A stretch of DNA of 64,000 nucleotides, taken from positions 18,290,001 through 18,354,000 of the forward strand of contig NW_027361696.1 in assembly GCF_039654945.1 (NCBI RefSeq), written 5' to 3'. Origin of the DNA: Dendrobates tinctorius. Taxonomy: Eukaryota. Below the pieces are notes generated by a model that did not search any database, had not been told where the DNA came from, and worked only from the letters and a program-made list of their open reading frames with translations. The position numbers and the translations under genes were made by a program. Of the stretch, positions 7,809-16,115 are shown in pieces (the stretch's first letter is position 1; each line of letters starts with the position of its first letter).

Positions 7809-10800
7809 ATCATAGAATGTTAGAGTTGGAAGGGACCTCCAGGTTCCCCGTGTCCAACCTCCTGCTCAATACAGGATTCACTGAACCATCTTAGACAGAT
7901 GTCTGTCCAGCCTCTGTGTGAAGACTTCCATTGCAGGAGAACTCACCACCTCTCGTGGCCACCTGTTCCACTCATTGATTGCCCTCACTGTCAAAAAGTT
8001 TTTTTCTAATAACTAATCTGTATCTTCTCCCTTTCAGTTTCATTTCATTGCTTCTTGTGTTTCCATGTGTAGATGATAATGATGATCCCTCTACACTGTG
8101 ACAGCCCTTCAGATATTTGAAGACAGCTATTAAGTCTCCTCTTAGCTTCTTTTTTACAAGTTAAACATTCCCAGATCTCATAGGACATACTCTGCAGTCC
8201 GCTCACCATCCTGGTCGCTCTACTCTGAACTTGTTCAGTTTTTCAATGTCTTTGAAATAATGTGGTGCCCAGAACTAGACCAAGTATTCCAGATGAGGCC
8301 TGAAAAAGGAGGAGTAGAGGGGGATAATTACTTCACGTGATCTAGACTCTATGCTCCTCTTAATACATCCTAGAACTGTGTTTGCCTTTTTTGCTGCTGC
8401 CTCACACTGTTGACTCATGTGCAGTCTGTGATCTCTTACTATATCCAAGTCTTTTTCACACGTGCTGTTGCTTAGGTCTATTCCTCCCATTCTGTAGATG
8501 TAATTTTCGTTTTTCTTGTCCAGATATAGAAACTTGCATTTCCCCCTGTTAAATACCATTCTATTAGTCGCTGCCCATTGTTCAAGCGTTTCTAGATCCT
8601 GCTGAATCCTTTCTCTGTCTTCTCTAGTGTTAGCTATCCATCCTAGCTTTACATTATCTATAAATTTGGATCAGTTTACCTTCAGTTCCCTTGTCTAGAT
8701 CATTTATAAAAATGTTGAACAACACTTGGGCCAGGACAGAGCCAGGTGGTACCCCACTTGTAATACTGGGCCAGGACAGAGCCTTGTGGTCCCCACTTGT
8801 AACACTGGAGTCAGGAGAGAGCCTTGTGGTCCCCACTTGTAACAATGGGGCCAGGACAAAGCCCAGTGGTCGCCACTTGTAACACTGGGGCCAGGACAGA
8901 GCCATGTGGTACCCCACTTGTAATATTGGGGCCAGAACAGAGGCTTGTAGCACCCCACTTGTAACACTGGAGCCAGGACAGAGCCTTGTGGTACCCCACT
9001 TGTAACACTGAGGCCAGAACAGAGCCTTGCGGTCCCCACTTGTAACACTGAGGCGAGGACAGAGCCTTGTGGTCCCCACTTGTAGCATTGGGGCCAGGAC
9101 AGAGAATTGTGGTACCCCACCTGTAACACTTGGACCATGGCAGAGCCTTGTCGTACCCCACTTGTAACGCTGGGGCAAGGACAGAGCCTTGTGGTACCCC
9201 ACTTGTAACACTGGGGCAAGGACAGAGCCTTGTGGTCCCCATTTGTAACAATGAGGCCAGGACAGAGCCTTGTGGTCCCCACTTGTAAAACTGGGGCCAG
9301 AACAGAGCCTTGTGGTACCCCACTTGTAATACTGGGGCCAGAACAGAGCCTTGTAGCACCCCACTTGTAATACTGGGATCAGAACAGAGCCTTGTGGTCC
9401 CCACTTGTAACACTGAGGCCAGGACAGAGCCTTGTGGTACCCCACTTGTAACCCGGGGCCAGCACAGAGCTTTGTAGTATCCCACTTGTAATACTGGGGC
9501 CAGGACAGAACCTTGTGGTCCTCACTTGTAAAACTGGGGCCAGGACAGAGCCTTGTGGTACCTCACTTGTTGAAATGTGGCCAGGTCAGAGCCTTGAGGT
9601 ACCCCATTTGTAATACTAAGGCCAGGACAGAGCCTTGCGGTACCCCACTTGTAGCACTGGGGCCAGGACAGAGCCTTGTGGTACTCCACTTGTAACACTG
9701 GGACCAGGACAGAGCCTTGTGGTCACAACTTGTAGCACTGGGGCCAGGACAGAGCCTTGTGGCACCCCACTTGTAGTATTGGGGCCAGGACAGAGCCCTG
9801 TGGCACCACACTTGTAACACTGGGGCCAGGTCAGAACCTTGTGGTACCCCACTTGTAATACTGAGGCAAGTACAGAGCCTTGTGGTACTCCACTTATAAC
9901 ACTGGGGCCAGGACAGAGTCTTGTGGTCCCCACTTGTAATACTGAGGCCAGGACAGAGCCTTGTGATACTCCAATTGTAGCACTAGGGCCAGGACAGAGC
10001 CCTGCGGTCCCTCCTGTAACACTGGGGCCAGGACAGGGCCTTGTGGTTCCCCACTTGTAATACTGGGGCCAGGACAGAGACTTGTGTTCCCCAATTGCAA
10101 TACTGGGGCCTGGAAAGAGCCTTGTGGTACCCAACTTGTAACACTGGGGCCAGAATAGAGCCTTGTGGTACCCCATTTGTAACACTGGGGCCAGGACAGA
10201 GCCTTGTGGTCCCCACGTGTAACACTGGGGCTATGACAGAGCCTTGTGGTACCCCACTTGCAACACTGGGGCCAGAACAAAGCCATGTGGTACCCCACTT
10301 GTAATACTGAGGCCAAGACAGAGTCTTGTGGTAACCCACTTGTGACACTGGGGCCAGGACAGAATCTTGTGGTCCCCCACTTGTAATACTGGAACCAGGA
10401 CACAGCCTTGTGGTACCCCACTTGTAACCCGGGGCCAGCACAGAGCTTTGTAGTATCCCACTTGTAACACTGGAGCCAGGACAGAGCCTTGTGGTACCCC
10501 ACTTGTAACACTGAGGCCAGAACAGAGCCTTGCGATCCCCACTTGTAACACTGAGGCGAGGACAGAGCCTTGTGGTCCCTACTTGTAGCATTGGGGCCAG
10601 GACAGAGAATTTTGGTACCCCACCTGTAACACTTGGACCATGGCAGAGCCTTGTCGTACCCCACTTGTAACGCTGGGGCAAGGACAGAGCCTTGTGGTAC
10701 CCCACTTGTAACACTGGGGCAAGGACAGAGCCTCGTGGTCCCCATTTGTAACAATGAGGCCAGGACAGAGCCTTGTGGTCCCCACTTGTAACACTGAGGC

Positions 10801-13800: not shown

Positions 13801-16115
13801 ACACTGGGGCTATGACAGAGCCTTGTGGTCCCCACTTGCAACACTGGGGCCAGAACAAAGCCATGTGGTACCCCACTTGTAATACTGAGGCCAAGACAGA
13901 GTCTTGTGGTAACCCACTTGTGACACTGGGGCCAGGACAGAATCTTGTGGTCCCCCACTTGTAATACTGGAGCCAGGACACAGCCTTGTGGCACCCCACT
14001 TGGAGCAGTGGGGCCAGGACAGAGCCTTGTAGTCCCCACTTGTAACACTGGGGCCAGGACATAACCTTGTGGGTACTTCACTTGTAATACTGGGGCCAGG
14101 ACAGAGTTTTATGGTACCCCACTTGTAATACTGAGGCCAGGATAGAGCCTTGTGATACTCCACTTGCAGTACTAGGGCCAGGACAGAGCCTTGAGGTCTC
14201 CACTTGTAATACTGGGGCTAGAACCGAGACTTGTGGTCCCCAATTTTAATACTGGGGCCAGGACAGAGCCTTGTGGTACCCCACTTGTAACACTGGGGCC
14301 AGGACAGAGCCATGTGGTACCCAACTTGTAATACTGAGGCTAGAACAGAGCCTTGTGGCACCCCACTTGTAGCAGTGGGGCCAGGACAGAGCCTTGTAGT
14401 CCCCACTTGTAACTGAGGCCAGGACAGAGCCTTGTAGTCCCCACTTGTAATACTTAGGCCAGGACAGAGCCTTGTGGGTACCTCACTTGTAATACTGGGG
14501 CCAGGACAGAGCCTTGGGGTACCCCATTTGTAACAATGGGGCCAGGACAGAGCCTTCTAATCCCCAAGTGTAACACTGGGGCCAGGACAGAGACTTGTGG
14601 TCCCTACTTGTAACCCTAGGGCCAGGACTGAGCCTTGTGGTACCCCACTTGTAACACTGGGGCCAGGACAGAATCTTGTGGTATTCCACTTGTAATACTG
14701 GAGCCAGGACACGGTCTTGTGGCACCCCACTTGTAGCAGTGGGGCCAGGACAGAGCCTTGTGGGTACCCCACTTGTAATACTGGGGCCAGGACAGAGCCT
14801 TGAGGTACCTCAATTGTAACACTGGGGCCAGGGCAGAGCCTTGTGATCCCTAAGTGTAACACTGGGGCCAAGACAGAGACTTGTGGTACCCAACTTGTAA
14901 TACTGAGGCCAGGACAAAGCCTTGTGGCACCCCACTTGTAATACTGGAGCCAGGACACAGCTTTGTGGCACCCCACTTGTAGCAGTGGGGCAAGGACAGA
15001 GCCTTGTGGTCCCCACTTGTAATACTGAGGCCAGGAAAGAGCCTTGTGGTACCCCATTTGTAACACTGGGGCCAGGACAGAGCCTTGTGGTCCCCACTTG
15101 TAACACTGGGGCCAGGACAGAGCCTTGTGGTTCCCACTTGTAATACTGGGGCTAGGACAGAACGTTGCGGTCCTCACTTATAACACTGGGGCCAGGACAG
15201 AGCCATGTGGTACCCCACTTGTAACACTGGAGCCAGGACAGAGCCATGTGGTACCCCACTTGTAACACTGGAGCCAGGACAGAGCCTTGTGGTCCCCACT
15301 TGTAATACTGAGGCCAGTACAGTGCCGTGTGGTACCCCTCTTGAAACACTGGGGCCAGGACAGAGCATTGTGGTACCCCACTTGAAACATTGGAGGCAGG
15401 ACACAGCCTGGTGGCACCACACTTGTAGCACTGGGGCCAGCACAGAGCATTGTGGTCCCCACTTGTAACACTGGGGCCAGGACAGAGCCTTATGGTCCCC
15501 ACTTGTAACACTGGGGCCAGGACAGAGCCTTATGGTCCCCACATGTAGCAGAGGGGCCAGGACAGAGCCTTATGGTCCCCACATGTAGCAGAGGGGCCAG
15601 GACAGAGCCTTATGGTCCCCACATGTAGCAGAGGGGCCAGGACAGAGCCTTGTGGTCCCCACTTGCAACACTGTGGCCAGGACAGAGCCTTGTGGTCCCC
15701 ACTTATAATACTGGGGCCAGGACAGAGCCTGTGGTCCCCACTTGAAACACTTCCAATTGGATGTGTAACCATTTATTATCACTGTTTGAGTGCGCTCACT
15801 GAGCCAGTTATTAATCCACCTAACCGTAGCCTTGTCAATCCCATACTTGACCATTTTTTTTAAAAAGGATAGTATAAGTATGAGATACTTTATCTTATCA
15901 ATCTTTATTAATGCTTTTGCTGAAATTGACATATACTAAATCTACCGCATTTCCCTTATCCACCCAGTCAGTGATTCCATCATAGAAGGAAATTAGATTA
16001 GTCTGGCATGGCTACTTACTGGCTGTGTAATAATGTGTTAAAAGACCTTTCCTGGTATAGGAGTAAGGCTCTCTGGCCTGTAATTTCCTGGCTCCGCCTT
16101 CTTCCCATGTTTGAA
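7809..16115 (-). mobile_element. 5'-truncated dead CR1 LINE split by a ~7 kb internal minisatellite
   Basis: CATAGAAT tail at 7811. ORF2 pieces 8275-8559 (CEKDLD..LHMSQQC..RPHLEY), [10 protein letters not shown] near 8700 and VRWINNWLSERTQTVIING near 15800. The FADD motif is degenerate. Confidence 0.92.
8722..15750. repeat. 40-41 bp minisatellite (~170 copies) derived from CR1 RT coding sequence
   Basis: Unit ACTTGTAACACTGGGGCCAGGACAGAGCCTTGTGGTACCCC; the minus strand reads [12 protein letters not shown]. Confidence 0.97.

What the first reader, a model, noticed from the sequence alone, without database searches (positions are those of the whole stretch)
8722..15750. 7 kb minisatellite born from the conserved PQG motif of a CR1 reverse transcriptase, with the seed repeat still visible
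Seen: the array sits exactly between ...INGYTSNWK and [10 protein letters not shown] of CR1 ORF2, and its 41 bp unit encodes [12 protein letters not shown]. On the minus strand the hexamer AGTGTT occurs at both array edges (GGAAGTGTTTCAAG near 15750; CCAAGTGTTGTTCAA near 8722), one unit apart in the inferred ancestral LINE. Established: short flanking direct repeats can seed minisatellites. Inference: a complete record of satellite birth from LINE coding sequence; other CR1 copies may be primed to do the same.
Basis: partly seen in the sequence, partly recalled or inferred. Interest (0 to 1): 0.72.

Follow-up and report, generated by a model that had tools for sequence, protein, structure and literature searches.

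The report
Minisatellite grown from a frog CR1 LINE
A 7-kb tandem repeat in a poison-frog genome grew out of 41 bases of a dead jumping gene's reverse-transcriptase motif, starting between two copies of a 6-base word; it is a clean example of a known way that such repeats arise, not a new phenomenon.

Summary
A 7,031-bp array (8721-15751; 173 units of 40/41 bp) splits one decayed, 5'-truncated CR1-type LINE on the minus strand (7811-16121).

- **Flanks:** they are exactly collinear on CR1-type ORF2 proteins and overlap only over the SGVPQGSVL(G/A)PVLF motif that the unit encodes.
- **Paralogues:** public contigs of this frog and three related organisms show normal CR1 copies with one unit between the same two flanks. 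AGTGTT sits on both sides, 41 nt apart (…AAG AGT GTT TCA AGT GGG…CCC CAG TGT TGT TCA AC).
- **Mechanism:** this fits microhomology-seeded duplication (Haber & Louis model). Later growth came from unequal exchange of 23-37-unit blocks, for example 867 bp at 99.9% identity.

Caveats:
- The record is not pristine. This copy lost 2 nt at the left hexamer, and the first unit carries derived variants.
- Tandem units also occur in the three other organisms, so the array is probably old.
- The site is not specially "primed". The 1.3-kb copy holds 39 comparable ≥6-nt repeat pairs, against about 30 by chance.

TE-derived minisatellites flanked by short direct repeats are already catalogued (about 300 in human). 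This is a new member of a known kind, of modest interest. The scan's notes hold no other array of this unit.

The parts
7811..16121 (-). One decayed, 5'-truncated CR1-type LINE copy, interrupted by the array
   Evidence: tblastn of CR1-type ORF2 proteins covers 16133-15666 and 8919-7884 collinearly. High-copy contig depth starts at about 16121 (table 2). The 3' end carries the ATTCTATG octamer.
15752..16121 (-). CR1 5' part (RT domain from ..GNYRPESLTPIPGKVF to ..INGYTSNWK), with many stops and frameshifts
15746..15751 (-). Left AGTGTT hexamer. This copy lacks the 2 nt (AG) that paralogues have here (family form AAG AGT GTT TCA = K S V S).
   Evidence: for coordinates. In one search, table 4, 'CT' put in behind 15749 or 'TT' behind 15750 accounts for a large share of contig depth in all four runs.
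8721..15751 (-). Minisatellite array of 173 units. Of the 172 units measured, 100 are 41 nt, 59 are 40 nt, 7 are 42 nt, 4 are 39 nt and 2 are 38 nt. 117 distinct unit sequences; mean unit-to-unit identity about 83%.
8721..8726 (-). Right AGTGTT hexamer (codons CCA GTG TTG of P-V-L in ..APVLFNIF..; CCC AAG TGT TGT in this copy)
7811..8720 (-). CR1 3' part ([10 protein letters not shown]... to the C-terminal ..FLTVRAINEWNRWPREVV.. region and 3' UTR)
   Evidence: (RVT_1 positions 118-144 and 161-194)
7811..7818 (-). Single ATTCTATG octamer, the CR1-type 3' terminus
   Evidence: Sequence. The octamer is described as the CR1 3' end in PMC2612034 and PMC8665684.
15345..15389 (-). Unit 10, the array unit most like normal single-unit CR1 copies. 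It keeps the family-type T after the hexamer (GTGTTTCAAG). Paralogous contigs anchor here and then jump to the flanks.
   Evidence: tables 5 and 7
8954..11845 (.). Youngest block duplication: about 1.4 kb (34-37 units) copied in tandem. 9384-10250 equals 10765-11631 at 99.9% over 867 nt.
12753..14712. Second block duplication of about 1 kb (23-25 units), 98.6-98.9% identical

Best explanation
An old, 5'-truncated CR1-type LINE inserted here and decayed. In its reverse-transcriptase coding DNA the word AGTGTT occurred twice, 41 nt apart. One copy lay in the Ser-Val codons before SGVPQG and the other in the Pro-Val-Leu codons before FNIF. A misalignment between these two words duplicated the 41 nt between them. 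This could have been replication slippage or microhomology-mediated repair/unequal exchange, as in the Haber & Louis model. Once two units existed, out-of-register recombination and slippage expanded the array. A 1-nt deletion variant (40 nt) and an A-for-T variant after the hexamer spread through it. Later growth was by tandem duplication of blocks of 23-37 units. The array is non-coding, CpG-poor junk-type DNA with no sign of function.

Shown: the array; flank collinearity; the unit's identity with the CR1 motif; the single-unit state with paired hexamers in paralogues; the block duplications.

Inferred: that the hexamer pair caused the first duplication; the order of events; that the arrays in the other organisms are orthologous.
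For: Array and strand restriction.

Flank collinearity on CR1-type ORF2 proteins, with overlap only over the motif. References read ..NG..S.W(K/Q/R)(K/P)V(D/S/T)[21 protein letters not shown]. Ours reads ..NGYTSNWK / [22 protein letters not shown].

Paralogues in four organisms:
- Contigs lying on unit 15345-15389 are preceded by ..GATCATTTATAAAAATGTTGAAC and followed by CTCTTCCAATTGGATGTGCAACC (38-74 contigs per run in B, C and D; 8 in A for the following sequence).
- Joints 15387-15391 to 15750/1 skip about 360 nt.
- The CT/TT insertion behind 15749/15750 restores AAG AGT GTT or AAA AGT GTT.

Junction homology of 6 nt or more is expected for only 0.25% of random 10-100-nt tandem duplications in this sequence.

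Block duplications at 97.9-99.9% identity with lags of 934-1503 nt. Adjacent units are no more alike than random pairs (0.832 vs 0.829), as expected if recent growth was by blocks.

The mechanism and precedent are published. PMC3389668 reports 7,276 TE-derived mini/satellites in human, 300 of them flanked by 5-20-bp direct repeats and attributed to the Haber & Louis model.
Against: The pre-expansion state was seen only in paralogues, not at this locus in an outgroup.

The left hexamer region has a copy-specific 2-nt loss, so the present 7-nt match (AAGTGTT) is partly secondary.

The first unit already carries the derived 40-nt variant, so the founder units have been overwritten.

39 comparable repeat pairs exist in the same 1.3 kb, so the hexamer explains where the junction lies but not why this copy expanded.

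Array length and the 99.9% block rest on one assembly. Logan contigs cannot span it.
Confidence: 0.8

Rival explanations
1. The first duplication had nothing to do with the hexamers. The 6-nt match at the junctions is coincidence, and the array started by some other event, for example non-homologous repair.
For: Short direct repeats are common: 39 runs of 6 nt or more at lags of 10-100 nt in the collapsed copy, against 30 +/- 6 in shuffles.
Against: Only 0.25% of random tandem duplications of 10-100 nt in this sequence would show 6 nt or more of junction homology. The pair exists in the family sequence at exactly one unit's distance.
Confidence: 0.1
2. The tandem duplication arose in an active CR1 master and was spread by retrotransposition. 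This locus inherited a short array and merely expanded it.
For: Tandem units are present in contigs of three other organisms (table 8: D record 9, C records 25 and 26, B record 17).
Against: The dominant paralogue signal in all four organisms is a single unit between the flanks (tables 5 and 7). The listed tandem-unit contigs have word depths close to the single-copy flank (B 28.9 vs 20-35; D 8 vs 10.8), as expected for one locus per genome. A duplicated 41 nt would frameshift ORF2 and disable an autonomous master.
Confidence: 0.05
3. The array is real, but its size and internal block structure are partly an assembly artefact (mis-expanded or mis-collapsed repeat).
For: 867 nt at 99.9% identity at a lag of 1381 nt. 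No read or contig spans the array, and the source-sample contigs break in the repeats.
Against: The older blocks differ by 1-2% and by indels of 1-3 units, as real duplications would. 117 distinct unit sequences give assemblers many anchors.
Confidence: 0.1
4. The array is a functional element, such as a repeat protein, a structured DNA/RNA, or a regulatory array upstream of the neighbouring J-domain gene.
For: The sense strand is open in all three frames for up to 369 codons (20-24 stops per sense frame against 84-88 per antisense frame). The array probably persists in several species. It lies 3.6 kb upstream of a DnaJ-domain first exon at 19349.
Against: Units of 40/41 nt change frame at every unit. 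The absence of stops follows from the unit consensus, and about 14% of random 41-mers are stop-free on one strand (my estimate). No protein relatives were found for the array ORF. Folding is no better than shuffles (z from -1.6 to +1.0). There are no Rfam hits.
Confidence: 0.03

Closest known systems
TE-derived minisatellites flanked by short direct repeats (Haber & Louis 1998 model; catalogued for human TEs by Ahmed & Liang 2012, PMC3389668)
   Same: The unit is a piece of a transposable element. Expansion happened after insertion at one copy. A 5-20-bp direct repeat brackets the unit, so the array equals n units plus one extra repeat.
   Different: The host is a frog, the donor is a CR1 LINE, and the piece is the catalytic-core coding motif of ORF2. 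The array is long (173 units, 7 kb). The progenitor state could be read from paralogues in four organisms.
Satellites and tandem repeats derived from LINE ORF2 sequence (chicken HinfI/SCR1 from CR1 3' UTR plus partial ORF2; PROsat and Pvc20 from L1 ORF2; review PMC9659126)
   Same: LINE coding DNA was turned into tandem repeats. There is a CR1 precedent in birds.
   Different: Those are high-copy satellites with longer monomers spread over chromosomes. This appears to be a single-locus minisatellite with a 41-nt unit still embedded in its parent element.
[quoted passage not shown]
   Same: Birth of a minisatellite from two short repeats a unit apart, leaving a terminal incomplete unit.
   Different: That model was set out for a fish (Poecilia reticulata) locus (title as cited in PMC3389668). 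Sequence alone cannot distinguish it from the Haber & Louis variant here.
Other minisatellites noted by this scan in the same genome (e.g. array copied from a histone H1 processing signal; promoter-motif array in STX4 intron 1)
   Same: The same genome and the same tendency to multiply short functional motifs into kb-scale arrays.
   Different: Different source sequences. Those notes were not checked here.

Membership tests
CR1-clade LINE (for the flanks) | Reverse-transcriptase ORF2 collinear with CR1-type ORF2 proteins | tested here: met
   phmmer with window:8278-8670:- found 13,802 relatives, the best at 50-59% identity. tblastn is collinear on both flanks.
CR1-clade LINE (for the flanks) | 3' end formed by the octamer ATTCTRTG rather than poly(A) | tested here: met
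   One ATTCTATG at 7811-7818, with no A-tail. The octamer definition comes from PMC2612034 and PMC8665684.
CR1-clade LINE (for the flanks) | Assignment to CR1 rather than neighbouring clades (L2, Rex1) by phylogeny or named references | not tested
The assignment rests on the octamer and on the ..FLTVRAINEWNRWPREVV.. C-terminal motif, which I recall as CR1-typical.
Minisatellite | Head-to-tail units of about 10-100 bp forming a kb-scale array with unit variants | tested here: met
   Period 41, 173 copies, 7,031 bp, 82% matches. 117 distinct units.
Haber & Louis type origin (short flanking direct repeats) | Array = n units + one extra copy of a 5-10-bp repeat at the far edge | tested here: met
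   AGTGTT at 15746-15751 and 8721-8726, and at the end of every unit.
Haber & Louis type origin (short flanking direct repeats) | The unexpanded progenitor carries the two short repeats exactly one unit apart | tested here: met
   Paralogous CR1 contigs in four organisms show one unit with hexamers 41 nt apart (tables 4, 5, 7).
Haber & Louis type origin (short flanking direct repeats) | Unexpanded state at the orthologous locus in an outgroup | not testable with these tools
   Orthologous flank contigs of B, C and D (8-12% diverged) stop before the CR1 (table 8). No frog assemblies are searchable here.
Dispersed satellite DNA family | Many arrays or high copy number across the genome | tested here: inconclusive
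   No second array in the 64-kb window. The listed tandem-unit contigs have about single-copy depth (table 8). No genome-wide search was possible. The scan's notes hold no other array, and a blank there means little.

The most novel reading that the evidence does not exclude
The paired AGTGTT of this frog CR1 subfamily is a recurrent hotspot. Arrays of the same 41-nt unit may have arisen independently at several CR1 copies and in several dendrobatid species. The junction-bearing contig of organism B would then be an independent birth rather than an ortholog. That would make a LINE family a predictable generator of minisatellites.
Probability: 0.08. Interest if true: 0.55.

Novelty: new member of a known kind. 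Interest (0 to 1): 0.3.

Why it matters
How minisatellites start is rarely visible, because the single-copy progenitor is usually lost. Here thousands of paralogous LINE copies preserve it, so the seed, the unit and the product can all be read in one genome. That makes the locus a good teaching or benchmark case for the direct-repeat model, and a possible marker locus if it is length-polymorphic. It does not reveal a new mechanism. The seed is no better than dozens of other short repeats in the same element, so it does not predict where arrays will arise.

Tried and rejected
- **Pfam on the upstream pieces:** no hit. Only the last unit plus downstream piece and the 131-aa piece gave weak RVT_1 matches (E about 0.02), so collinearity was tested with full ORF2 relatives instead.
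- **Self-BLAST of the flanks in the window:** found only two CR1 3' fragments (5402-5660, 4639-4815) that do not reach the motif.
- **The look-up of encoding contigs for the closest long relative (P0008):** returned a chimeric gene call in a different genome (L001). It is too distant for a DNA-level hexamer test and was not used.
- **The search for homologous proteins with the 369-aa array ORF, to fish for sister arrays:** none of 8,000 candidates scored E<=1e-5. This is weak evidence only, because repeat ORFs of frog assemblies may not be in the collection.
- **A megablast self-comparison:** printed nothing. It was replaced by an ungapped diagonal scan.
- **Hairpin-driven slippage:** rejected. 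Three-unit stretches fold no better than shuffles on either strand.
- **Rfam:** no family in the window.
- **Coding repeat protein:** rejected (frame changes every unit; blank).

For the repeat-pair statistics only, a script joined this locus's own decayed flanks with its own last unit in memory.
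Full report
**1. The observation**

Tandem Repeats Finder reports a single array at 8721-15751 with period 41, 173.1 copies, 82% matches and score 9034. A 21-nt core of the unit has 161 matches with up to 3 mismatches. All lie inside the array on the + strand, and shuffles give none.

I cut the array at a conserved 14-mer on the minus strand. That gave 172 measured units plus a terminal copy that runs into the flank. Of the 172, 100 are 41 nt, 59 are 40 nt, 7 are 42 nt, 4 are 39 nt and 2 are 38 nt. 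There are 117 distinct sequences.

On the minus strand the consensus reads ACAAGTGGGGTACCACAAGGCTCTGTCCTGGCCCCAGTGTT, which translates as (T)[12 protein letters not shown](L). The 40-nt class has lost the T of the GTA (Val) codon.

- ...INGYTSNWK is window:15750-15854:-.
- [22 protein letters not shown]... is window:8657-8758:-.

AGTGTT on the minus strand sits at 15746-15751 and 8721-8726. The window has no N.

**2. What the flanks are**

The minus strand from about 16121 down to 7811 is one decayed, 5'-truncated LINE copy with many stops and frameshifts.

Its longest open piece (131 aa, window:8278-8670:-) found 13,802 relatives in the exhaustive protein search, the best at 50-59% identity. 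tblastn of long relatives against the locus is collinear. For P0008:
- The upstream flank covers residues 531-686.
- The downstream part covers residues 668-833.
- The only overlap is the motif, at residues 675-687.

The reference proteins read ..RWI.SWL..R.QRVV.NG...SW(K/Q/R)(K/P)V(D/S/T)[22 protein letters not shown]. Ours reads ..RWINNWLSERTQTVIINGYTSNWK / [22 protein letters not shown]. Nothing is missing or extra except the array and a 2-nt loss just before it.

The element ends in a single ATTCTATG octamer (7811-7818). That octamer is the CR1-type 3' terminus described in PMC2612034 and PMC8665684. Pfam places the last unit plus downstream flank at RVT_1 positions 118-144 and the next piece at 161-194, both only weakly. 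I did not build a tree, so the assignment to CR1 rather than a sister clade rests on the octamer and on a C-terminal motif that I recall as CR1-typical.

**3. The decisive test: paralogues**

Earlier notes of this scan describe the genome as a poison frog. I did not verify this. One run of the source organism (A) and one each of three other organisms (B, C, D) were laid as Logan contigs on 15000-16960 at 80% likeness or more.

- **Left hexamer.** In all four runs a large share of contig depth has 'CT' inserted behind 15749, or 'TT' behind 15750. On the sense strand that gives AAT TGG AAG AGT GTT TCA AGT GGG (or AAA AGT GTT), which is N W K S V S S G. The left AGTGTT therefore belongs to the family sequence. 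Our copy has merely lost an AG next to or within it.
- **Single-unit state.** Contigs lying on unit 15345-15389 are preceded by ..GATCATTTATAAAAATGTTGAAC, which is our right flank. They are followed by CTCTTCCAATTGGATGTGCAACCATTTATT, which is our left flank (38-74 contigs per run in B, C and D; 8 in A for the latter). Joints from 15387-15391 to 15750/1 say the same. Normal copies hold exactly one unit, with the two hexamers 41 nt apart.
- **Orthologous flank.** The unique flank 16254-16888 is covered by one contig per organism: identical in A (record 8), and about 8-12% different in C, B and D. Orthologous DNA therefore exists in three related organisms. Those contigs stop before the CR1.
- **Tandem units in other organisms.**
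  - D record 9 covers 3 units with 5 differences and 2 gaps.
  - C record 26 covers 4 units.
  - C record 25 covers about 3 units.
  - B record 17 (123 nt) covers 2.6 units plus 12 nt of the left flank.
  - Their word depths are close to the single-copy flank in the same runs.

The simplest reading is that the array predates the split of these organisms and is a single locus. Orthology is inferred, not shown.

**4. How special is the seed?**

I joined this locus's own flanks and its own last unit in a script, for counting only. In that 1,327-nt collapsed copy:
- There are 39 maximal direct repeats of 6 nt or more at lags of 10-100 nt. Shuffles give 30 +/- 6.
- A random tandem duplication of 10-100 nt would show 6 nt or more of junction homology with probability 0.0025.

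The junction homology is therefore good evidence for how the first duplication happened. It is not evidence that this site was unusually prone. The left hexamer also depends on the Ser-Val codon pair AGT GTT. More distant CR1 proteins have K/P-V at that position, so only this subfamily carries the pair. The unit has no hairpin tendency (z from -1.6 to +1.0).

**5. History of the array**

- **The T after the hexamer.** The family-type T (GTGTTTCAAG) survives at the left boundary, in units 9-10 and in one internal unit. Nearly all other units have A.
- **The first unit.** It already has the derived 40-nt form, so exchange has reached the edge and the founders are overwritten.
- **Unit similarity.** Adjacent units are no more alike than random pairs (0.832 vs 0.829).
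- **Recent growth by blocks.**
  - 9384-10250 equals 10765-11631 at 99.9% over 867 nt (lag 1381, 34 units). This sits within a roughly 1.4-kb duplication spanning 8954-11845.
  - A roughly 1-kb duplication within 12753-14712 is 98.6-98.9% identical (lags 1016 and 934).
  - Older nested copies have lags of 530-611 nt.
- **Interpretation.** This is the pattern expected from unequal exchange.
- **CpG.** Observed/expected CpG is 0.05-0.12 simply because the unit has no CpG.

**6. Function**

None is indicated.
- The sense strand is open for up to 369 codons in all frames. This follows from a stop-free unit, and the frame shifts at every unit.
- The array ORF has no protein relatives.
- Rfam finds nothing.
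- The array is intergenic. Ty3/gypsy remnants lie at 1-6.9 kb, and the first, J-domain-encoding exon of a gene lies at 19349 on the + strand.

**7. Comparison with the known**

TE-derived tandem repeats are well documented. PMC3389668 lists 7,276 TE-derived mini/satellites in human. About 300 are flanked by 5-20-bp direct repeats and attributed to the Haber & Louis model, and 159 fit the Taylor & Breden model. The review PMC9659126 lists satellites from LINE ORF2, including a chicken CR1-derived one.

This locus is a clear new example in a frog. It is notable for the 7-kb size, for the source being the catalytic RT motif, and for the readable progenitor. It is not a new kind of thing.

**8. 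Limits**

- No genome-wide search for other arrays was possible.
- No read spans the array.
- The single read-laying run covered the left junction only (1,961 letters, within the operators' limit).

Noticed in passing
window 16124-16205 and 7690-7790: The DNA immediately outside the CR1 on both sides is homologous: about 75-80% identity over about 95 nt. Each side holds two copies of a ~54-nt motif with the core ATACTCTGTGCTGCTG. Either the LINE landed in a short tandem or dispersed repeat, or this is an unusually long, decayed target-site duplication. The motif is multi-copy in all four organisms, with variable spacing (depth and joints).
   Followed up: partly
window 16962-17468, 17746-19165, 20378-20849, 28873-29482, 30809-33372, 36137-39053, 61589-62491: The window is unusually rich in other minisatellites (units of 52/131, 45/136, 86, 55/100, 41, 373 and 54/106 nt). 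These include a second, unrelated 41-nt array of 62 copies at 30809-33372, and a G-rich 45-nt array just upstream of the J-domain gene.
   Followed up: no
window 19349-19520 (+): An ORF starts with a signal-peptide-like stretch followed by the first 28 positions of a DnaJ domain (Pfam E 8e-08). It is probably exon 1 of a membrane or ER J-domain protein gene. The CpG-rich 16.3-19.3 kb region would then be its promoter area.
   Followed up: partly
window 1131-6858: Fragments of a Ty3/gypsy-type LTR retrotransposon lie in opposite orientations (RNase H, integrase zinc finger and core, chromodomain). CR1 3' fragments at 4639-4815 and 5402-5660 interrupt them.
   Followed up: partly
window 16254-16888: This unique, CpG-rich stretch is present as a single contig in each of three other organisms at about 8-12% divergence. 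It is a usable anchor for finding the orthologous locus.
   Followed up: partly
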